Below, in pieces: positions 6,136 through 13,420 of a stretch of 64,000 nucleotides of DNA (the stretch's first letter is position 1; each line of letters starts with the position of its first letter). A program made the translations under genes and the position numbers. Under the pieces are notes generated by a model. It did not search any database. It had not been told where the DNA came from and saw nothing but the letters and a program-made list of their open reading frames with translations. The stretch covers positions 1-64,000 of IMG/VR virus record IMGVR_UViG_3300044712_001937; one strand, given 5' to 3'.

Positions 6136-7233
6136 TTAAAGTTTAAATTTATTTTGCATTTTTGCTTTTTTTCTAAGTTCATTAACTTCTCTCAATGCAT
6201 TTGGGTTATAAATTTCACGTTTCACTATTGACACAAGATGATTAAATTCACTTTCAGTTATTGCTTGTCCTACATACCCCTCATTTTTCAATATATAACT
6301 TTTAGGAGCTGAACTTGATGCTGAAGGATTACCTTCTGAATCAATAGTACTTTCAAATGTCATCTCAAGCAATTCCTGAATTTTTTCAGTAACATTTGCA
6401 GTAATTTTCTGCTTAGTCTTTTTCAATGCCTTTTCAAGCATATCAACTACATTCTCCTGATGATTTCTTTTTACTTCAGCATATGCCATAGTAAAATCTT
6501 TCATTGGTGAACTATGTTTAAGTTCAGAAATTATAGCTAATGAACCATAACAGTCACGAATCATTAAATTCCAAACTTGTTCAGCATATGTGAACGATGG
6601 AAATTTATCAATTGCAACAATTTCTCCTTCAATAAAAACAATCATTCCAATCATTTTCTTAGGACGTTCAAAATGTGCAATAAATTGTTCAAGTTTTTTA
6701 TCATACTTGCTAAAATATACATCTAAATAATTACCAGCAGATGATTGAGTATCTATACCTAATTTATTAATCGCAGGATAAATTCTTGAATATCCGGGTG
6801 CTGTTCCAACAGTATTAAATACCATTTCACGCATAGTTACTGGAAGCATACGGAATTCTTGAGTACCTCTAAAAGTACCACCTTGAGAACCTTGGACACA
6901 TCCAGCATCATTATAAGTAACATTTGCTCCTTTAGCAATATAACCTGCCTTAGTCATACCGTGATTTTGAGCAACTTGCTTTGTCATAACAGCCATTTGT
7001 GTAGGTACAATTACTTCTTTACTTTCTTTATTTTGAAAGTTTATTTGTCCATATGAACTATTACCAGCTACTAATGCTGTTAATGGGTTTGCAAACCGAG
7101 TATCTAATGAATATTCTGAATCTGTTGTTAAACCAACAATTTGCATATTCAATATAGATTGAACTATGATGTTACCATCATTATCCTTGATAGGACGGCA
7201 ACCTTTAAGTAATTCTGTAAATTCTCTTGTCAT
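6136..7233 (-). CDS. ARPP-like (ARG/rhodanese-phosphatase-associated) domain protein
   Basis: 365 aa; motifs KQVAQNHGM, AGCVQGSQGG and GMIVFIEGEIVAID resemble ARPP-family proteins as recalled (no HMM run); starts 12 nt after the vWA gene stop. Confidence 0.5.
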   Translation of the reverse strand: MTREFTELLKGCRPIKDNDGNIIVQSILNMQIVGLTTDSEYSLDTRFANPLTALVAGNSSYGQINFQNKESKEVIVPTQMAVMTKQVAQNHGMTKAGYIAKGANVTYNDAGCVQGSQGGTFRGTQEFRMLPVTMREMVFNTVGTAPGYSRIYPAINKLGIDTQSSAGNYLDVYFSKYDKKLEQFIAHFERPKKMIGMIVFIEGEIVAIDKFPSFTYAEQVWNLMIRDCYGSLAIISELKHSSPMKDFTMAYAEVKRNHQENVVDMLEKALKKTKQKITANVTEKIQELLEMTFESTIDSEGNPSASSSAPKSYILKNEGYVGQAITESEFNHLVSIVKREIYNPNALREVNELRKKAKMQNKFKL

Positions 7234-7245
7234 AGTATATATTTT

Positions 7246-8874
7246 TTAAACGTTTACACTAATTTTTTTTGACCTTTTAACTGGTGCAGCTTCAAGAGCC
7301 AACATTTGAGTTTCAAGCCATCTTTTTGTATCAATTTCAAGCAATCTTGCAGTAATTTGTGGTTGAATTGCACTTGGGTTACTTATTGCCATTGGAACTA
7401 CACTTGTACCTAATTTACGTACATTAGCACCCATTTCTGCACTTGTTATTGGCGAAATCTGAAACATTGGAGTATTTCTACCAGTTTCTGTTTGCCAAAT
7501 CGAAATAACCTCATTAGTTAATCCATCATAAGCATTTTCATAGCCATCAGTTATGATAAAAATAGCATCATAAGGTTTTGACGAATTTTCAACTTTCAAT
7601 AATCCAATAAATGAACTTGCTAAATCAGTTACTTCACCACCAGTTACAACAATATTAGTTAATTCCGCAGATTTACCCAATACTTTTGCTGTAAAATCAG
7701 CAATTGCTTTTGGAGTATTCTTTGATTCAATTTTATCACCTGACATTGAATTACTATCATCAACAATAATTCCAATATTTTTATAATAGAAATTATTGAT
7801 TCTTTTCTTAATAGCAAGTTTATCTATTGCTGAAATTATTTCAGGAGTAAATGATGTTTCATAACCAGTTTTATATAAAGCCAAGAAATCTGTTGCTTTA
7901 TCCATATCAACAGTCTTTTCAACACCCAACTTTGCAGTTGATTTTGTTTGACGGATTTGTTGATTTGTTGATGTAACTTCAACATTCTTTCTGATTAAAG
8001 CTTTAGTTGCTTGTTTTTGAATATCAGTAGACCACATTGAATGATATTGTGGATGTTTAACACTTGAAATTAATCCAAGTAAAACTTCTTCCGGAACATT
8101 TTTAATTCCAGTAATATCAACCTTTGCTTTTAAATATTCACTCAACAATGGAAAATCTAAAGCTGGATAATTTACACCATTATCTTTTTTAAATAAAAAA
8201 AGAAATAATTTAAACGCACGTGAAGCATCACCATTAAAATATTTTAATATATATTCATTAATAATATTACTTTCCTTTTCAGTTGTAACGCCATTTGAAT
8301 ATACAACAAGTTTACGAGCAATTGAAAGCAATATAGATGTTTTCTTTTGACCATATACATGTTTTAAAATTTCAGCAATTTTATTTCGATATTTTAATGA
8401 AAAAAATTCAAGATTTGATTGTCCCCAAATATATCCAAGAATAATTTTTCTTGTCCTTTCATTATTTACTTTAGAATTTTTTAAATCAACAAAAAGACGT
8501 AACACATAAGGTAAACCATTATCTGCAAGATTATCTAATGATGATAATATTGCTTTATCACTTAAACCATTATCATACCAATCAATAGGATTAACAATAT
8601 TACATGCACCTCCCTTTAATGTATTTTTTAATTCATTAAGCAATACTTCAGATATAAATCGACCAGTAGCACCTTTTTGGGTTGCAATAATCAATGGGAG
8701 TTCTTTTGAAAGCATATACATATTCTTAATTTGAGATTGTATTGCTTTCAATTGTTCATCTTTAGAGTGGTAATAAGTAGCACTGCTCTTAGCACCACTT
8801 GCCACTGTCAAACCATCAGTAATTGATTGCTTAACTGTAGACAACATGTTGTTTGTTAATACCAAATTTTTCAT
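7246..8874 (-). CDS. Helical N-terminal region + C-terminal vWA (MIDAS) protein, TROVE/Ro60-like architecture
   Basis: 542 aa; MIDAS-type IIVDDSNSMSG and FIITDGYEN in the C-terminal ~180 aa; the preceding ~350 aa look alpha-helical and Lys/Leu-rich. vWA call is solid; TROVE relationship is inferred. Confidence 0.6.
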   Translation of the reverse strand: MKNLVLTNNMLSTVKQSITDGLTVASGAKSSATYYHSKDEQLKAIQSQIKNMYMLSKELPLIIATQKGATGRFISEVLLNELKNTLKGGACNIVNPIDWYDNGLSDKAILSSLDNLADNGLPYVLRLFVDLKNSKVNNERTRKIILGYIWGQSNLEFFSLKYRNKIAEILKHVYGQKKTSILLSIARKLVVYSNGVTTEKESNIINEYILKYFNGDASRAFKLFLFLFKKDNGVNYPALDFPLLSEYLKAKVDITGIKNVPEEVLLGLISSVKHPQYHSMWSTDIQKQATKALIRKNVEVTSTNQQIRQTKSTAKLGVEKTVDMDKATDFLALYKTGYETSFTPEIISAIDKLAIKKRINNFYYKNIGIIVDDSNSMSGDKIESKNTPKAIADFTAKVLGKSAELTNIVVTGGEVTDLASSFIGLLKVENSSKPYDAIFIITDGYENAYDGLTNEVISIWQTETGRNTPMFQISPITSAEMGANVRKLGTSVVPMAISNPSAIQPQITARLLEIDTKRWLETQMLALEAAPVKRSKKISVNV

Positions 8875-8960
8875 CTTACTAAATTTAAATTTTTGTTACA
8901 GTTATATTTATAAAAAATCAAAAATACATAAATTAATTTAATTAATCACAATAATAAACA

Positions 8961-9010
8961 AAAAAAATGGGCAAGTATTGTATAATTTCTTATACAAATC
9001 CCCGCCCATT
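8961..9010 (-). terminator. Terminator-like hairpin with GAAA tetraloop at the 3' end of the ncRNA cluster
   Basis: Minus strand: AATGGGC-gggga-t-TTGTATAA-gaaa-TTATACAA-tactt-GCCCATT followed by a T run. Confidence 0.6.
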
Positions 9011-9053
9011 AATTTTTGGAAAAATAAATCTTCTCAATAAGAGAAGAAGTTTA

Positions 9054-9119
9054 GTTGTATTTTTACAAGTTTGTGCCACCACTATCGGATGGCAAATTTC
9101 AATTTGCTGTATACACAAC
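9054..9119 (-). ncRNA. Stand-alone copy of the repeated RNA motif (element B)
   Basis: Minus strand: GTTGTGTATACAGCAAA ... TGCCA/TGGCA hairpin ... TGTAAAAATACAAC; terminal 7-bp stem GTTGTGT/ATACAAC. Confidence 0.55.
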
Positions 9120-9322
9120 AAGTTCTTCCATAATGCTTTTTTTTGAAAAACTCCCACACTTCTGTGGCAGAAAACCATTTTTAACCTTCAAATGTTAGAT
9201 GATACTACCCTTTTTATAAGTAAAATTTCTCGTATCAAGAACTGAAAAACACCACAAATTACGGTATTGTGGACAACCACTTCAAACATCCTTTGGATGA
9301 TGATAATATTTCGGGAATATTG

Positions 9323-9440
9323 TAAAAGTATTTTTGTTTTTGTGCAAGTTTAAGAGACTTGTGCCTTAACCACTTGGCTATTTTTCAATTTTGGCTGAAA
9401 AAGTCGGAGTCGAACCAACGAATTTACTGTAAATACTTTA
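9323..9440 (-). ncRNA. Circularly permuted tRNA-Lys(CUU)-like RNA closed by the repeated motif (element D)
   Basis: Minus-strand order: motif strand 1, T arm (GTTGG-TTCGACT-CCGAC), acceptor 3' TTTTTCA-G-CCA, linker AAAT, acceptor 5' TGAAAAA, D arm GCCAAGTGGTTAAGGC, anticodon arm CAAGT-CTCTTAA-ACTTG, motif strand 2. Confidence 0.75.
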
Positions 9441-9557
9441 AGTTTTCCCTTATGCTGTACCTCAAAGTTTGAATTGCTTCAGGGACAATGAGGAATTCCA
9501 TTCACACGGTTACGTTAACTTTCGTTAAGAGGCTTGACCGTGCATCACGTTTATATT

Positions 9558-10187
9558 TTAAAGAACTCTACCAAATGACCAACCAATTGGTATTGTATCA
9601 TTAGTTTTTATTTTTTTATTTTCATTACCGTTTGTAATCCAACGAGTATTATATTGAGAATTATTTTCACCACAGTTTTTACCTTTATGAACTTTCTTCA
9701 TCAACATTATTGTTTCATTAGAATGTTTCTTACCATCCCAATATCCATTCATTCCATTTTTGCTCAAAAATTCTTTTTGACCTATAGATTGCTTTTTGCA
9801 TTGATTATTTCTCCATTCATCGTTATTCATTAATTCAATAAAACGTTTATTACCCTTTTTAGAATTTATGATTTGTTGTTCATGAGAAAATCCTCCAGTA
9901 CCACCAACACGTAAATTAATACATTTAGGGTCTAACAATAGAGAATCATTAACCAATTCATTTTCTCTTAAAGCCAAAGAACTTCGGTCAGAATAATATT
10001 CAAGCACTTCTAATTTAAAATTTTCTTTGCCATATTTATTTATCGACCTTTTCAATCTTTTTCCACTTCCCAAATAATCATCATTTAAATTATTTGTAGA
10101 ATGCATTCCAATATAAAATTCACCTTTTATTAAATTGGTTGTTTTATAAATAAAATGATATTTTTTTAACTCATTTAAATTTGCCAT
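9558..10187 (-). mobile_element. Free-standing GIY-YIG (Seg-like) homing endonuclease
   Basis: HFIYKTTNLIKGEFYIGMHST, YLGSGK, conserved E; NUMOD3-like KKHSNET motif. Confidence 0.85.
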
Positions 10188-10238
10188 ATCAAAACAATAT
10201 TTTGATATAAATACTAAACAAATTCAAAAAAGTCCAAG

Positions 10239-10373
10239 TGGGGAGAATTGGAATCGAACCAATAATCAACTGTTTTCAAGACAATTTGCTTTACCTTTAC
10301 TGAAAACACCATTAGTTTTCTCACTTAAGAGAACATTGAGATAGTATTTTTTGTTTATTTTTGCTATCTCCCC
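10239..10373 (-). ncRNA. tRNA-like RNA with ~60-nt motif-bearing insertion in the D-loop (element E)
   Basis: Acceptor GGGGAGA/TCTCCCC-A, T arm ATTGG-TTCGATT-CCAAT, anticodon arm ATTGT-CTTGAAA-ACAGT; D region interrupted by AAAAAATAC...GTGTTTTCAGTAAA; no encoded CCA. Confidence 0.7.
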
Positions 10374-10400
10374 ATATTTAAAATTTTAAAGAACTTCAAA

Positions 10401-10429
10401 AAATGAAGAGTTTTTAATTCTTCATTTTG
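10401..10429 (-). terminator. Terminator-like hairpin
   Basis: AAAATGAAGA/TCTTCATTTT inverted repeat followed by T on the minus strand; AT-rich, so weak. Confidence 0.4.
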
Positions 10430-10439
10430 TATGTTAAAT

Positions 10440-10542
10440 TTAAGGTGGCGCAGACCTATTATGGCTGTCATTTTCTGTCATTACATCAGAACCACAAATT
10501 ACGGTTGGGTTAACCAGCAACTACATTTCTGCATTTCGTAAT
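10440..10542 (-). ncRNA. Putative structured ncRNA downstream of tRNA-Met (element G)
   Basis: Non-coding and locally GC-richer; stems GATTACG/CGTAATT, GTTG/CAAC and TTCTG/CAGAA; shares an exact 15-mer with 9251..9265. Confidence 0.4.
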
Positions 10543-10555
10543 CTTAAATTTTTCG

Positions 10556-10627
10556 TAGCGGAAGCAGGACTCGAACCTACGACCTTTTGGTTATGAGCCA
10601 AACGAGATGCCGCTTCTCTATTCCGCA
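10556..10627 (-). tRNA. tRNA-Met(CAU), initiator-like
   Basis: Full cloverleaf: TGCGGAA/TTCCGCT-A with a 1:72 mismatch, D stem GAGA/TCTC, TTTGG-CTCATAA-CCAAA, GTAGG-TTCGAGT-CCTGC; CCA not encoded. Confidence 0.92.
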
Positions 10628-10641
10628 ATATATTTTTAATT

Positions 10642-11061
10642 TTAATATCTATTAGAAACACATTCTTTACAATGTCCATTTACACCATTCCATCTTCGAT
10701 TGCATTTATGAAATTCTTCCATTTTTTTCATCTTTTTACATTTTGAACAAAATGAATATCCTTCTTTACATTTAATTCTTTTATGGAAACCTCCGAATCT
10801 TCTTTCAGGTAAATTACATTTCATATGACTAAATGCAATATTATCTAAACTAAAAAACAACTCTTTAGGATTTTCACTATGAAGCCAATTTTCCTTATGT
10901 TCAATACTTAATTCATCAACATTTAAAATTGGCTTTTTACATTTAAAACAAATATTCTCATTCAATTTACATAATAAATGAAATAATATTTGTTTTCTTA
11001 ATTTACCAGATGCAGTACCTAAAGGCATTCCTAATTGTGCATCTTTATCTTTACAACTCAT
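10642..11061 (-). CDS. HNH endonuclease with CxxC zinc knuckles
   Basis: CFKC...SIEHKE...NIAFSHMKCN (HNH-type) plus C-terminal CSKC/CKEC. Confidence 0.7.
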   Translation of the reverse strand: MSCKDKDAQLGMPLGTASGKLRKQILFHLLCKLNENICFKCKKPILNVDELSIEHKENWLHSENPKELFFSLDNIAFSHMKCNLPERRFGGFHKRIKCKEGYSFCSKCKKMKKMEEFHKCNRRWNGVNGHCKECVSNRY

Positions 11062-11094
11062 TATCCTATGATATTTAGTTATAATTATTTTTTG

Positions 11095-11227
11095 TGGGGA
11101 AGGTCAGAATCGAACTGACAATCAATTGTTTTAACGACAACTTGCTGTACCTTTACTGTAAATATAGCCAGTTCTCCAAAAGGAGTAATACGATTATATT
11201 TTTTGTATATAATTTGCATACTTCCCC
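11095..11227 (-). ncRNA. tRNA-like RNA with motif-bearing D-loop insertion (element F), paralog of element E
   Basis: Acceptor GGGGAAG/CTTCCCC-A, T arm GTCAG-TTCGATT-CTGAC, anticodon arm GTTGT-CGTTAAA-ACAAT; insertion AAAAAATAT...ATATTTACAGTAAA. Confidence 0.7.
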
Positions 11228-11281
11228 AAATATTTTTTTTACATAATGTAAAAGAACTTTTTTCTTATCTCTAAGACGATA

Positions 11282-11313
11282 CAAACATACAACACCTTTT
11301 TTTATTTTCCAAA
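11282..11313 (-). promoter_or_regulatory. Bacteroidota sigma-ABfr-type promoter driving the ncRNA cluster
   Basis: Minus strand TTTG (11313-11310), 20-nt spacer, TATGTTTG (11289-11282): matches the -33 TTTG / -7 TAnnTTTG consensus. Confidence 0.7.
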
Positions 11314-11425
11314 TATTTTTCAATAATATTTTTAAAAAAATGTAAAATAATTTATAATCGTCTGAGAGATAAATACGTTAATAATTCAAAAAAGTCATAT
11401 TTATTTATAAAAAAAATTAAAAATT

Positions 11426-13420
11426 TTATTCTTTTTTTATAACATTCTGACTTTCACGCAATTTAGTAAGTTGATTATGAATATCATTATGTTTATTTTC
11501 CAATTCGTCAGGGTCAATTAATTCATTTTCATTCAATTCTGACGAATCTCTTTCAATATATGGTACTCCCGGAGATACAAATTTCATTTTAAATTCTTCA
11601 GGTTTTTCAACTACAATATCTGGATTTAATAATTCATGTATAGTCTTTTTTTCATCAATTATTAATGGAGTTTCAATTTTAACTTCGTCAGGTTCTGCAT
11701 TTAAAATGGTTTCAGTATCACCCGACCAAGGAAGTAAATCATTAGTTTCTTCATTTATACCCTCACTTACACCCTCATTTATTCCCTCATTTTTAATTAT
11801 TTCAGATTTATAATCCAGTTCAAAATCATCTTTTTTAATAATAGATTCATTTTCAAAATTACTTGATATATTATTAAAATCACTATTATTTATATTATCG
11901 TTATTAATTACGTTTAGAATATTTTCTTCACTATGTTGACTTATTGCAGCGTGTAATTCAATATTAGGTGCTTTAGTTTCTTCATATTTTAACCTCATAC
12001 TTTCTTCCAAAGCATCAATATCTTTATCATCGTGATGTTTAACTGTTTTATTTATTTGACTATATTTATATTGGTCATTTTCAAGTCTAATTTCCATTGT
12101 ATCGTTATTAAATACACAGTCTTTAAATTGTTGACCATCTTGAGCAAATCGTGCTTTTAATATTTGAACATTGGCTAATTGTGCTTCTTTTTGTTCTTTA
12201 GTTTTAGCAACTGACATGAAAAAATGCGCTTTTTGAATTCTTTTAATATTTCCACCAGTTTGATTAGCTTCGATATATTCTGCATTAAAACCAGTACGAT
12301 TAGTTTGTAATGCAGTCCATGCAGGAATTTCAAAATCTGAAGCTAATGCTTCGAATGCTTTAATAACAACTAATTCACCTTCATTTCTATCTTGAGTTTT
12401 TTTATGCGATTCAACACAATCAAGATAATCTAAAATTAAAATATCAAATTTATAACCATATTTTTTTTGATGACGAATCATCCAATTTTTAACATCTTTG
12501 ATAGTAGTATCTTCCTGACTAAATCTTTTAATTACAAGATGACCACCATTACCTTTTAATTCTTCAGCTTTACGATTAATAATATCACTAACTAATTCAA
12601 GATTATCATCGATTTGACTTAAAGGAGTATTAGACCAAATTGCATAATGTTTTCTTTGGATTTGGTCTACAGTATCTTCAAATATAATTTGAGCAACATT
12701 TTTACCTTGTTCATATGCTGTATTTGAAATTTTTGTTAATGCTGTAGTTTTACCAACACCTGAAGGAGTTAATATAACACCAATTTCACCTTTTCCCAAT
12801 CCACCACCAGTTACGGCATCAATAAATTGAATTCCAGTTGGTATGGTTTGACGAAATTCTTTTCTTAAAGCTCTTGATATATTATCGAATACTTCAGTAC
12901 CCTCATCTTCTTTAACACCAATTTGACTTATTTTAATAAATTTTTCTTCAATACTACTAATAGTATATTTATTTTTTATATCACCACTTTTTGTTTTATC
13001 AAGAATATGTTCTGCAACTTTACGATATTCTTGTTGTTTTATAAAAAAATTAGTAGATTTTTGAACTGCATCACCATCATGCATTAAAGATTTATTTAAA
13101 ACTCTTTCATTCCATAACTCAATATTTTTTAATATTGCAAACAAACATTCTTCTTCAATCAAATTTCCCGGTTTTTTGAATTGATGAATTGCTTGAATTA
13201 TACTTTTATTTTGTAGATTAGGTACTTTTTGGTATTCTTTATAAAATTCGTAAATAATTAAATAAAGTCGTTTAACATTAGGGTCATCAAAATATTCAAC
13301 AGCAAGATTTGGTAATACTTCTTCAGCAAATTCAGGTTCAACGAGTAATTGCCACATCAATTTAGTCTGAAAATCATGTCCAAGATAACCTGTAAATGTA
13401 TTTTCGGTTGTTTCACTCAT
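11426..13420 (-). CDS. dnaB: Replicative DnaB/gp41-like helicase with acidic C-terminal extension
   Basis: Walker A LTPSGVGKT, LILDYLD, WTALQTNR, ILKARF motifs. Confidence 0.9.
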   Translation of the reverse strand: MSETTENTFTGYLGHDFQTKLMWQLLVEPEFAEEVLPNLAVEYFDDPNVKRLYLIIYEFYKEYQKVPNLQNKSIIQAIHQFKKPGNLIEEECLFAILKNIELWNERVLNKSLMHDGDAVQKSTNFFIKQQEYRKVAEHILDKTKSGDIKNKYTISSIEEKFIKISQIGVKEDEGTEVFDNISRALRKEFRQTIPTGIQFIDAVTGGGLGKGEIGVILTPSGVGKTTALTKISNTAYEQGKNVAQIIFEDTVDQIQRKHYAIWSNTPLSQIDDNLELVSDIINRKAEELKGNGGHLVIKRFSQEDTTIKDVKNWMIRHQKKYGYKFDILILDYLDCVESHKKTQDRNEGELVVIKAFEALASDFEIPAWTALQTNRTGFNAEYIEANQTGGNIKRIQKAHFFMSVAKTKEQKEAQLANVQILKARFAQDGQQFKDCVFNNDTMEIRLENDQYKYSQINKTVKHHDDKDIDALEESMRLKYEETKAPNIELHAAISQHSEENILNVINNDNINNSDFNNISSNFENESIIKKDDFELDYKSEIIKNEGINEGVSEGINEETNDLLPWSGDTETILNAEPDEVKIETPLIIDEKKTIHELLNPDIVVEKPEEFKMKFVSPGVPYIERDSSELNENELIDPDELENKHNDIHNQLTKLRESQNVIKKE

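What the first reader, a model, noticed from the sequence alone, without database searches (positions are those of the whole stretch)
10239..10373. tRNA-like gene with a ~60-nt structured insertion in the D-loop (element E)
Seen: perfect acceptor and T arms flank a D region interrupted by AAAAATAAACAAAAAATAC-tat...[TTCTC/GAGAA hairpin]...atg-GTGTTTTCAGTAAA, which resumes at GGTAAAGC. The anticodon is register-ambiguous: UGA in a 7-nt loop, or UUG in a 9-nt loop. There is no long variable arm, as a Ser tRNA would have. Inference: either a non-decoding tRNA mimic carrying a protein-binding module, or a new type of tRNA intron. Removing the insert between GC and TT would restore a GCTT/AAGC D-stem.
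Basis: partly seen in the sequence, partly recalled or inferred. Interest (0 to 1): 0.72.

Follow-up and report, generated by a model that had tools for sequence, protein, structure and literature searches.

The report
Phage Y-RNA-like tRNA mimic
The "tRNA with a 60-nt insert" is real and conserved, and is most likely a tRNA look-alike carrying the docking stem for a Ro60-type RNA-binding protein encoded 1.4 kb away in this jumbo phage, a new layout of the known Ro60/Y-RNA system rather than a spliced tRNA.

Summary
On the minus strand (10374-10238) a perfect 7-bp acceptor stem, a canonical T arm and an anticodon-like arm enclose a ~60-nt stem/internal-loop/stem hairpin in the D region. The window is the start of a complete 364.7-kb jumbo phage. 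The whole 135-nt element, insert included, recurs in 24 distinct relatives, with compensatory changes in 24 of 33 pairs. A paralog lies at 11228-11094.

The same module recurs in sibling RNAs of the cluster, but there the RNA's 5' and 3' ends form it. It encloses an ordinary cloverleaf, small hairpin RNAs, or a circularly permuted tRNA-like gene (window 9454-9307). That is the architecture of bacterial Y RNAs (YrlA/Yrn1).

The next ORF on the same strand (8874-7246, 542 aa, no Pfam hit) models at pLDDT 94, and its 13 best PDB matches are all Ro60/Rsr. RNA cluster and Ro60-like gene co-occur (19 with both, 9 with neither, 2 with RNA only). This holds even in a phage whose Ro-like protein is 28% identical.

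The "anticodon" is not conserved. Best reading: a non-decoding, Y-RNA-type tRNA mimic with a Ro60-binding module grafted into the D arm. Binding and function are inferred. Splicing is not excluded, because no RNA data exist.

The parts
10238..10374 (-). Element E1, the whole RNA: nt -1 (10374) to C74 (10238); 135 nt from G1 to A73.
   Evidence: CM score 148 bits; structure supported by covariation.
10367..10373 (-). Acceptor 5' strand GGGGAGA. The preceding nt (10374) covaries with nt 73.
   Evidence: 6 of 8 pairs show compensatory change. The -1:73 pair is UA 16, CG 3, UG 3, AU 1.
10361..10366 (-). U8, A9 and the D-stem 5' strand (G10 C11 A12 A13).
   Evidence: GC/GC is conserved; L020 has GAUU/AAUC; other relatives have GCA/UGC.
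10297..10360 (-). Inserted module, in order: A-rich linker with AAAC; P1 5' strand 10350-10341; internal loop 10340-10334; P2 hairpin 10333-10318; invariant AACU 10317-10314; P1 3' strand 10312-10303; invariant CAGUAA 10302-10297.
   Evidence: P1 90% paired with 5 covarying pairs; P2 with 5 of 5 covarying pairs. The same module is found in sibling RNAs.
10288..10296 (-). Rest of the D loop (G18 G19, A21) and the D-stem 3' strand AAGC.
10269..10285 (-). Anticodon-like arm: 5-bp stem (6 bp possible) and loop CUUGAAA.
   Evidence: The stem covaries; the loop sequence is not conserved among orthologs.
10247..10263 (-). T arm AUUGG-UUCGAUU-CCAAU.
   Evidence: 5 of 5 pairs covary.
10238..10246 (-). 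Acceptor 3' strand UCUCCCC, then A73, then the invariant C74.
11094..11228 (-). E2, a type-B paralog of E1 with the same module (acceptor GGGGAAG, loop CGUUAAA).
   Evidence: (129 bits).
9307..9454 (-). Sibling RNA of YrlA type: a circularly permuted tRNA-like gene. Order: module 3' half, T arm, acceptor 3' strand, G73-CCA, linker, acceptor 5' strand, D arm, anticodon-like arm, module 5' half.
   Evidence: (14 relatives; 97.7% paired; 6 of 7 acceptor pairs covary).
9043..9130 (-). Sibling small RNA: the module halves enclose a GC-rich hairpin. It is followed by a terminator-like hairpin at 9047-9029.
7246..8874 (-). 542-aa Ro60-fold protein (helical-repeat ring plus vWA domain with DxSxS and TDG motifs), the presumed protein partner.
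   Evidence: The 13 best PDB matches are all Ro60/Rsr: E from 6e-7 to 1e-3, TM 0.37-0.52 by the model's length, 0.41-0.53 by the chain's.
6136..7233 (-). ARPP-1 domain protein, syntenic with the Ro60-like gene and fused to it in one remote relative.
   Evidence: P0268.

Best explanation
Element E is a non-coding RNA of about 135 nt that is not used for decoding. It is a tRNA mimic of the Y-RNA kind.

Fold. It adopts a tRNA-like shape: a 7+1 bp acceptor stem, a T arm, the D-loop GG and an anticodon-like arm. A 60-nt stem/internal-loop/stem hairpin projects from the junction between the D stem and the D loop.

The hairpin. It is the same module that closes the other small RNAs of this gene cluster through their 5' and 3' ends. 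That is the position and shape of the Ro60-binding stem of Y RNAs.

Proposed mechanism. I propose that the module docks onto the phage's own Ro60-like ring protein, encoded 1.4 kb downstream on the same strand. The tRNA-like body would then make the particle look like a tRNA to tRNA-handling factors (RNase P, the CCA-adding enzyme, exoribonucleases such as PNPase, or host anticodon nucleases), or would protect the RNA.

Shown: the structure and its covariation; reuse of the module in Y-RNA topology; the Ro60 fold of the neighbouring protein; synteny and co-occurrence.

Inferred: physical binding, that the insert is retained in the mature RNA, and any downstream function.
For: 1. The whole element, insert included, is conserved in 24 distinct relatives whose helicase is only 42-68% identical. 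96% of cells are paired and 24 of 33 pairs carry compensatory changes.

2. No member lacks the insert.

3. The module, with its invariant AACU and UU[U/A]CAGUA, occurs only in this cluster in the 364.7-kb genome.

4. In relatives the module flanks four other cargo types through a stem made of leader and trailer.

5. One cargo type is a permuted tRNA-like gene ordered as YrlA (V/T arm, loop-closed acceptor, D arm). Its acceptor stem covaries (architecture from Chen et al. 2014, PMC4201824).

6. Another cargo type is an ordinary cloverleaf attached through its acceptor end, as in D. radiodurans Yrn1.

7. The adjacent 542-aa protein models at pLDDT 94 and pTM 0.91. Its 13 best PDB matches are all Ro60/Rsr/TROVE. 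The next unrelated hit has TM 0.12.

8. It carries the vWA-type motifs DxSxS and TDG.

9. Of 30 loci long enough to judge, 19 have both the module RNAs and the Ro-like gene, 9 have neither, 0 have the gene alone and 2 have RNA only.

10. The RNAs lie upstream of the Ro-like gene on the same strand, within the 4 kb reported for Y RNAs.

11. A 462-kb phage whose Ro-like protein is only 28% identical has two E-type RNAs 2.6-3.2 kb upstream on the same strand. Its P1 sequence is different but still complementary.

12. Loop positions 34-36 vary among orthologs, and several loops lack U33.
Against: - There are no binding or expression data. No RNA run was listed, and the complex prediction was not folded.
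- The published Ro-binding motif GNCGAAN0-1G is not present. Only an analogous purine-rich ...RAACU stretch is found.
- No Rfam Y-RNA family matches, and Pfam TROVE does not hit the protein.
- In known Y RNAs the Ro-binding stem is made by the RNA termini. In E it is a closed hairpin inside the D region, and this topology has not been shown to bind Ro60.
- One fragment (L049) and one complete genome (G002) carry an E-like RNA with no detectable Ro-like gene.
- The co-occurrence count is not corrected for shared ancestry.
Confidence: 0.65

Rival explanations
1. The module is an intron or processing cassette. A so far unidentified nuclease cuts at both junctions and a phage RNA ligase seals the exons. 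E would then yield a tRNA of about 75 nt, and the permuted sibling gene a normal tRNA through a circular intermediate, as in Cyanidioschyzon or archaea.
For: - Removing 55-65 nt gives an ARAGORN-detectable tRNA.
- The same module sits at three different places of tRNA-like bodies (D loop, variable region, acceptor end), which is expected for something that gets removed.
- Permuted genes mostly encode CCA.
- The phage encodes Rnl1-like and Rnl2-like RNA ligases.
Against: - There is no BHB motif, no EndA and no RtcB, and no known ribozyme or intron family in Rfam.
- The module's sequence is more conserved than the acceptor and T stems of the exons, which covary freely.
- The would-be tRNAs have non-conserved and often non-canonical anticodon loops.
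- Small non-tRNA hairpins are flanked by the same module.
- Topology and neighbourhood are fully explained by the Ro60/Y-RNA model. M. smegmatis YrlA shows that a permuted tRNA-like RNA functions as two pieces without ligation.
Confidence: 0.12
2. E is a stable tRNA-like RNA that works without Ro60, for instance as a decoy for host anticodon nucleases or other tRNA-binding defence proteins. This would be comparable to the unexplained T4 species 1 RNA (RNA C) in the T4 tRNA cluster.
For: - T4 rnaC (139 nt) folds with an acceptor-like stem, a long hairpin in the D position, an anticodon-like arm and a T arm, and lies next to the GIY-YIG gene segB.
- Loop sequences change quickly between close relatives.
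- E-like RNAs exist in two records without a detectable Ro-like gene.
Against: - The E covariance model does not match T4 rnaC.
- This reading does not explain why the module is shared with non-tRNA cargos, nor why the cluster tracks the Ro-like gene.
Confidence: 0.12
3. E is a working decoder tRNA (UGA anticodon, Ser codon UCA) that keeps an enlarged D arm.
For: - The acceptor stem, T loop, G18 G19, U33 and A37 are intact in E1.
- C74 follows the discriminator, as it does in every ARAGORN-called tRNA of this genome.
Against: - The anticodon is not conserved among orthologs.
- There is no long variable arm for SerRS.
- The acceptor helix is 8 bp.
- The genome already has two tRNA-Ser(UGA) genes.
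Confidence: 0.05
4. A decaying tRNA pseudogene or a chance match.
For: It scores below the Rfam threshold and ARAGORN does not call it.
Against: Full-length conservation and covariation across 24 distinct sequences, plus a distant phage.
Confidence: 0.01

Closest known systems
YrlA-type bacterial and phage Y RNAs (Salmonella, M. smegmatis, mycobacteriophages; Chen et al. 2014, PMC4201824)
   Same: - A small RNA with a tRNA-like domain (T loop, D loop, acceptor-like stem) plus a stem-bulge-stem that binds Ro60.
- Encoded within a few kb of the Ro60 gene on the same strand, often several per locus.
- The sibling RNA at 9454-9307 has the same element order as YrlA, and a 7-bp acceptor like the RNase P-cleaved M. 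smegmatis YrlA.
   Different: - In E the presumed Ro-binding module is a closed hairpin inserted in the D region, and the RNA termini form a real acceptor stem.
- A full anticodon-like arm is present.
- The GNCGAAN0-1G motif is absent.
- No Rfam match.
- The protein partner is too divergent for Pfam TROVE.
Deinococcus radiodurans Yrn1 and the Ro60/Y RNA/PNPase (RYPER) particle; Thermus phage phiLo Ro60 with Yrl1/Yrl2 (PMC12135203)
   Same: - The Ro60-binding stem continues into a tRNA-like domain that has an anticodon-like arm.
- Phage-encoded Ro60 with its own Y-like RNAs upstream.
   Different: - Sequence motifs and module placement differ.
- PNPase tethering has not been tested here.
T4 species 1 RNA (RNA C) in the T4 tRNA cluster
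   Same: - About 139 nt.
- Predicted tRNA-like fold with a long hairpin in place of the D arm.
- Sits in a phage tRNA region next to a GIY-YIG homing endonuclease gene.
- Function unknown.
   Different: - No detectable sequence or covariance-model similarity.
- T4 has no Ro60.
Archaeal and algal tRNA genes with non-canonical introns or circular permutation (BHB / EndA / RtcB pathway)
   Same: - An intervening structured element in the D loop.
- A sibling gene with the 3' half placed before the 5' half.
   Different: - No BHB motif, no EndA, no RtcB.
- The module is sequence-conserved and also flanks non-tRNA hairpins.

Membership tests
Canonical decoding tRNA | Detected by tRNA models (Rfam RF00005 gathering score, ARAGORN). 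| tested here: not met
   27.1 bits against a gathering score of 29, and only for the 3' 72 nt with a broken acceptor. ARAGORN finds nothing. It is detected only after the insert is deleted in silico.
Canonical decoding tRNA | Anticodon and the U33/R37 loop rules are conserved among orthologs. | tested here: not met
   Among 24 members, positions 34-36 read UGA (12 members), AUG (2) and UUG (2), one each of UGG and CAU, and, in five loops that lack U33, UUA or GUA. One loop has only 6 nt.
Canonical decoding tRNA | Acceptor stem, T arm, and the U8, A14, G18 G19 and T-loop nucleotides. | tested here: met
Archaeal/eukaryal-type tRNA intron (BHB) | Bulge-helix-bulge motif at the exon-intron junctions. 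| tested here: not met
   The junctions lie in a large asymmetric internal loop between the D-stem GC pairs and P1. There is no 3-4-3 motif.
Archaeal/eukaryal-type tRNA intron (BHB) | Splicing endonuclease and RtcB-type ligase are available. | tested here: not met
   PF01974 and PF01139 are absent from the complete phage genome. The host is unknown. Rnl1-like and Rnl2-like ligases are present.
Self-splicing intron or small ribozyme in a tRNA | Match to a known intron or ribozyme family. | tested here: not met
   No such Rfam match at E <= 10 in 8500-11500. The insert is only about 60 nt.
Y RNA (Ro60-associated; YrlA/Yrn1 type) | Encoded near a Ro60 ortholog (within about 4 kb), on the same strand. 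| tested here: met
   E1 ends 1.4 kb upstream of the Ro60-fold ORF on the same strand. The association holds in 19 of 21 module-bearing loci and in a phage whose Ro-like protein is 28% identical.
Y RNA (Ro60-associated; YrlA/Yrn1 type) | Stem-bulge-stem formed by pairing of the RNA's 5' and 3' ends. | tested here: not met
   In E the module is a closed hairpin inside the RNA. The feature is met by the sibling RNAs at 9454-9307 and 9130-9043 and by relatives.
Y RNA (Ro60-associated; YrlA/Yrn1 type) | Conserved Ro-binding motif GNCGAAN0-1G (GGUCCGA in animals) on the 5' strand. | tested here: not met
   The invariant nucleotides are ...RAACU and UU[U/A]CAGUAA. A divergent E-like RNA in another phage has UUCGAA at the CAGUAA position.
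Y RNA (Ro60-associated; YrlA/Yrn1 type) | tRNA-like domain with conserved T-loop and D-loop nucleotides. | tested here: met
Y RNA (Ro60-associated; YrlA/Yrn1 type) | Physical binding to Ro60, and dependence on it for accumulation. | not testable with these tools
   Complex prediction gave no fold. No RNA runs were listed.
Ro60/TROVE protein (for the 542-aa neighbour) | Helical-repeat ring plus a C-terminal vWA domain with MIDAS residues. | tested here: met
   AF2 model with pLDDT 94. The 13 top Foldseek PDB hits are all Ro60/Rsr, with full-length alignments and TM 0.37-0.52 by the model's length, 0.41-0.53 by the chain's. D372-x-S374-x-S376 and T442-D443-G444 are conserved.
Ro60/TROVE protein (for the 542-aa neighbour) | Sequence match to Pfam TROVE (PF05731). 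| tested here: not met
   No hit even at E <= 10. None in 10 remote relatives. The profile has no significant hit against PDB sequences.
T4 RNA C (species 1 RNA) | Sequence or structure homology. | tested here: not met
   Model R1 gives no hit on T4 rnaC at E <= 1. Only the overall predicted architecture is alike.

The most novel reading that the evidence does not exclude
The shared module may be a removable cassette. It would be cut out, perhaps on the Ro60-like ring, and the ends sealed by the phage's Rnl1/Rnl2 ligases. Jumbo phages would then mature D-loop-interrupted and circularly permuted tRNA genes without the archaeal BHB/EndA machinery, giving a set of tRNAs whose anticodons switch rapidly between related phages.
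Probability: 0.1. Interest if true: 0.9.

Novelty: new variant of a known kind. Interest (0 to 1): 0.6.

Why it matters
Ro60 and its Y RNAs are conserved from bacteria to humans, yet the role of the tRNA-like domain of bacterial Y RNAs is still unknown.

This lineage of uncultivated jumbo phages offers a natural experiment. One protein-docking module is grafted onto tRNA-like bodies in three different topologies (D loop, variable region, acceptor end) and onto small hairpins, with up to six such RNAs per cluster. The loop sequences change quickly between relatives.

Three practical consequences follow:
- The Ro60 family extends well beyond what Pfam TROVE detects: 353 cluster representatives, none with a Pfam TROVE hit among the ten sampled.
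- Genes that look like "tRNA with an intron" or "permuted tRNA" in phage genomes may be Y-type RNAs, which matters for tRNA annotation in huge phages.
- The Ro60-like gene is linked to an ARPP-1 protein, both as a neighbour and by fusion in a remote relative. This points to a conflict-related or RNA-repair-related role that can be tested.

Tried and rejected
- BHB/EndA splicing: no motif, and PF01974 and PF01139 are absent.
- Known ribozymes, introns and Y-RNA families: no Rfam match.
- Homology to T4 RNA C or RNA D: no covariance-model hit.
- Search for homologs lacking the insert: none among 60 loci and 5 whole records.
- Expression data: only DNA runs from rhizosphere metagenomes hold the sequence, and no RNA run was listed.
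- Unbiased duplex-energy scan for leader/trailer partners: uninformative, because A/U-rich sequence gives many equally stable false partners.
- Architecture-constrained partner search: it found about half of the partners, against about 13% in shuffles, and suffers from register errors. I therefore relied on alignments and covariation.
- Pfam, PHROGs and PDB-sequence searches of the 542-aa protein: nothing.
- First AF2 model from a shallow alignment: poor (pLDDT 66). It was replaced by a model from a deep alignment.
- Complex prediction of the protein with E RNA: not folded, so it is no evidence either way.
- Cultured relatives: blastn of the locus against GenBank phages hit only homing-endonuclease genes. 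tblastn of the Ro-like protein found a single uncultured 462-kb phage.
- Canonical TROVE or a Ro-like gene in the phage G002, which carries a divergent E-like RNA: none found. This remains unexplained.

Full report
**Where the window comes from.** The window is the first 64 kb of a complete 364,702-bp virus record with direct terminal repeats. It is about 26% G+C. It carries 49 ARAGORN tRNAs and a tmRNA outside the window. It is an uncultivated jumbo phage, and the only public runs holding the sequence are rhizosphere metagenomes.

**The observation.**
- Element E lies on the minus strand; RNA position n is window coordinate 10374-n.
- It has a perfect 7-bp acceptor stem, U8-A9-G10-C11 and an insert of about 60 nt.
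- After the insert come a D-loop remnant with GG, a 5-6 bp stem with the 7-nt loop CUUGAAA, a 5-nt variable region and a canonical T arm, then A73 and C74.
- ARAGORN misses it. Rfam tRNA scores only its 3' 72 nt, at 27.1 bits, below the threshold.
- The MFE fold gives the three tRNA helices plus a long hairpin in the D position (z = -3.2).

**Conservation.**
- I used the neighbouring DnaB-like helicase to fetch 59 related loci.
- blastn and a covariance model built from the alignment find the whole element, insert included, in 24 distinct sequences at 97-157 bits. The helicases of these phages are only 42-68% identical.
- A second copy, E2, lies in the window at 11228-11094.
- On the model-based alignment 96% of cells are paired, against about 50% when the partners are slid. 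24 of 33 pairs carry compensatory changes, including all five pairs of the inner hairpin (P2) and five pairs of the 10-bp outer stem (P1).
- No member lacks the insert.
- The nucleotide before G1 covaries with nt 73, and nt 74 is always C.
- The partners of the D-stem 3' strand lie before the insert (GAUU/AAUC in L020, GCA/UGC or UGC/GCA in others). The insert therefore follows position 13.
- The loop at the anticodon position is not conserved. Positions 34-36 read UGA in half of the members, but also UUG, UGG, AUG and CAU. Several loops lack U33, and one has 6 nt.

**The insert is a reused module.**
- Its invariant parts are a purine run ending in AACU on the 3' side of P2, UU[U/A]CAGUAA after P1, and an A-rich stretch with AAAC before P1.
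- In the own genome they occur only three times, all within 2 kb on the minus strand: E2, E1 and 9454-9307.
- A fourth, slightly different copy flanks a small RNA at 9130-9043.
- In relatives the two halves of the module flank four other kinds of cargo:
  - an ordinary cloverleaf tRNA;
  - a hairpin of about 30 nt;
  - a GC-rich hairpin;
  - a circularly permuted tRNA-like gene. Its order is module 3' half, T arm, acceptor 3' strand, N73-CCA, linker, acceptor 5' strand, D arm, anticodon-like arm, module 5' half.
- In these RNAs P1 and P2 are formed by leader and trailer. Their sequences are specific to each cargo and complementary within it.
- For the permuted gene, 14 relatives give 97.7% paired cells, and six of seven acceptor pairs show compensatory change.
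- The many G-U pairs show that the pairing is at the RNA level and on this strand.

**First hypothesis considered: an intron.**
- A module that sits at the D loop, the variable region or the acceptor end of tRNA-like bodies looks like something that is removed. Deleting it in silico does restore ARAGORN-detectable tRNAs.
- Against this, there is no bulge-helix-bulge motif. The genome has no EndA and no RtcB. No intron or ribozyme family matches.
- The phage does encode Rnl1-like and Rnl2-like ligases.
- No RNA data could be found.

**The neighbour decides the reading.**
- The 542-aa ORF at 8874-7246 follows the RNA cluster on the same strand in every locus long enough. It is 66-80% identical, which is more conserved than the helicase. 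An ARPP-1 protein follows it.
- It has no Pfam, PHROG or PDB-sequence match.
- ESM Atlas pointed to TROVE/Ro60-vWA clusters.
- An exhaustive profile search gave 353 cluster representatives.
- With 113 of these as alignment, AlphaFold2 gave a model with pLDDT 94 and pTM 0.91.
- Its 13 best Foldseek matches in the PDB are all Ro60 proteins: human, Xenopus, D. radiodurans Rsr and Thermus phage phiLo. E-values run from 6e-7 to 1e-3, the alignments are full-length, and TM is 0.37-0.52 by the model's length and 0.41-0.53 by the chain's.
- The next hit is unrelated, with TM 0.12.
- The C-terminal domain keeps DxSxS and TDG, as vWA/MIDAS domains do.
- The protein is therefore a divergent Ro60.

**Link between the RNAs and the protein.**
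- Of 30 loci with at least 4.5 kb after the helicase, 19 have both module RNAs and the Ro-like gene, 9 have neither, none has the gene alone and 2 have RNA only. Of these two, one is a spurious motif hit and one is a genome fragment.
- Fisher's test gives 4e-6, not corrected for shared ancestry.
- The last RNA usually starts 225-290 nt before the ORF.
- The only GenBank phage with a relative of the protein (28% identity, a 462-kb uncultured phage) has two E-type RNAs 2.6-3.2 kb upstream on the same strand. Its P1 sequence is different but still complementary.

**Comparison with what is known.**
- Chen et al. 2014 (PMC4201824) showed several relevant points:
  - Bacterial and phage Y RNAs lie within 4 kb of Ro60 on the same strand.
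  - They have a terminal stem that binds Ro60 and a tRNA-like domain.
  - YrlA is ordered V arm, T arm, loop-closed acceptor stem, D arm.
  - M. smegmatis YrlA is cut by RNase P and receives CCA.
  - In D. radiodurans Yrn1 the terminal stem takes the acceptor position and an anticodon-like arm is present.
- The phiLo study describes phage Yrl RNAs as stem-bulge-stem structures upstream of the phage Ro60, forming a complex with host PNPase (PMC12135203).
- The sibling RNAs of this cluster match these two topologies.
- Element E uses the same parts in a third topology. The module is closed by a loop and inserted at the start of the D loop, and the RNA ends form a true acceptor stem.
- T4 species 1 RNA, whose function is unknown, has a similar predicted architecture but no detectable homology.

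**What remains open.**
- Binding is inferred, not shown; the complex prediction was not run by the tool.
- The published GNCGAAN0-1G motif is absent.
- A closed-hairpin version of the Ro-binding stem has no precedent.
- A complete related phage genome carries a divergent E-like RNA, whose insert has UUCGAA at the CAGUAA position. It has neither the Ro-like protein nor a Pfam TROVE hit.
- Whether the module is ever removed, and why the loops at the anticodon position change so fast, cannot be settled without RNA and protein experiments.

**Verdict.**
- The intron reading is kept as a minor rival, about 0.12.
- It is a new variant of a known kind of system (Ro60/Y RNA), found in a large uncultivated phage clade.

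Noticed in passing
window 9307-9454 (-): A circularly permuted tRNA-like gene. The T arm and acceptor 3' strand with G73-CCA come first, then a 4-nt linker, then the acceptor 5' strand, a Ser/Leu-type 3-bp D arm and an anticodon-like arm (loop CUCUUAA). The two halves of the E module enclose it. It is present in 14 relatives, with covarying acceptor pairs. The Rfam tRNA hit at 9320-9387 is its 5' half.
   Followed up: yes
window 11094-11228 (-): A second copy of the element (E2, type B). It has the same architecture, acceptor GGGGAAG, D stem UGC/GCA and loop CGUUAAA, which ARAGORN reads as anticodon UUA after in-silico removal of the insert.
   Followed up: yes
window 9043-9130 (-); ORF 8990-9178 (-): A small RNA whose module-like leader and trailer enclose a GC-rich hairpin (GCCAUC...GGUGGC). 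The listed 62-aa ORF overlaps it and is probably not a gene. A terminator-like hairpin at 9047-9029 shares one arm with the RNA's terminal stem, so the two pairings are mutually exclusive.
   Followed up: partly
window 7246-8874 (-) and 6136-7233 (-): A Ro60-fold protein that Pfam TROVE does not detect, always followed by an ARPP-1 domain protein. The two are fused in one remote relative (P0268, 884 aa). The Ro-like family has 353 cluster representatives.
   Followed up: partly
window 10642-11061 (-) and 9558-10187 (-): HNH and GIY-YIG homing-endonuclease genes sit inside the RNA gene cluster. The HNH gene is absent from all other relatives and the GIY-YIG gene from most. This recalls segB in the T4 tRNA cluster.
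   Followed up: partly
window 9251-9265 and 10491-10505 (+ coordinates): An exact 15-nt repeat (ACCACAAATTACGGT on the + strand) in two spacers of about 180 nt in the cluster that contain no recognised RNA. These spacers may hold further small RNAs.
   Followed up: no
E family alignment (window 10374 and 10238-10239) and relatives: The nucleotide before G1 covaries with nt 73 (UA 16, CG 3, UG 3, AU 1), giving an 8-bp acceptor helix. Nt 74 is invariably C, as it is after every ARAGORN tRNA of this genome.
   Followed up: partly
relatives L004-L051 (e.g. L017 7315-7445); window 10274-10280: Loops at the anticodon position of all module-bearing tRNA-like RNAs differ between close relatives. In the flanked cloverleaf the readings are UUC, UCA, AUC, GUU, GUC, UAU, UUU, CGU, CCU and GCA. 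U33 is often missing, while positions 37-38 stay AA.
   Followed up: partly
genome outside the window: G000:C1 104574-104658, 106791-106875, 107847-107932, 109731-109814, 120697-120784, 137439-137525, 137531-137619, 138318-138401: tRNAs for Gln, Glu, Val, Trp, Lys, Cys, Asn and Ile that are 84-89 nt long and have long variable arms, each next to a normal-length isoacceptor. Also present: a tRNA with anticodon CUA (148036-148110), a tmRNA (111992-112351), an Rnl1-like ligase (117697-118233) and an Rnl2-like ligase (207759-208364).
   Followed up: no
L062 (G002:C1:13000-25000), RNA at L062 5829-5969 (-): A complete related phage genome without the Ro-like gene has a divergent E-like RNA and neighbouring RNAs. 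They share a different motif (GGUUACUUCGA, which contains the CGAA of canonical Y RNAs). They lie downstream of a 768-aa protein with an N-terminal vWA domain.
   Followed up: partly
L061 4888-5026 (-) (T4 rnaC): T4 species 1 RNA folds (MFE, z = -4.6) as an acceptor-like stem, a 70-nt hairpin in the D position, a 10-bp anticodon-like arm and a T arm. This is the same overall plan as element E.
   Followed up: partly
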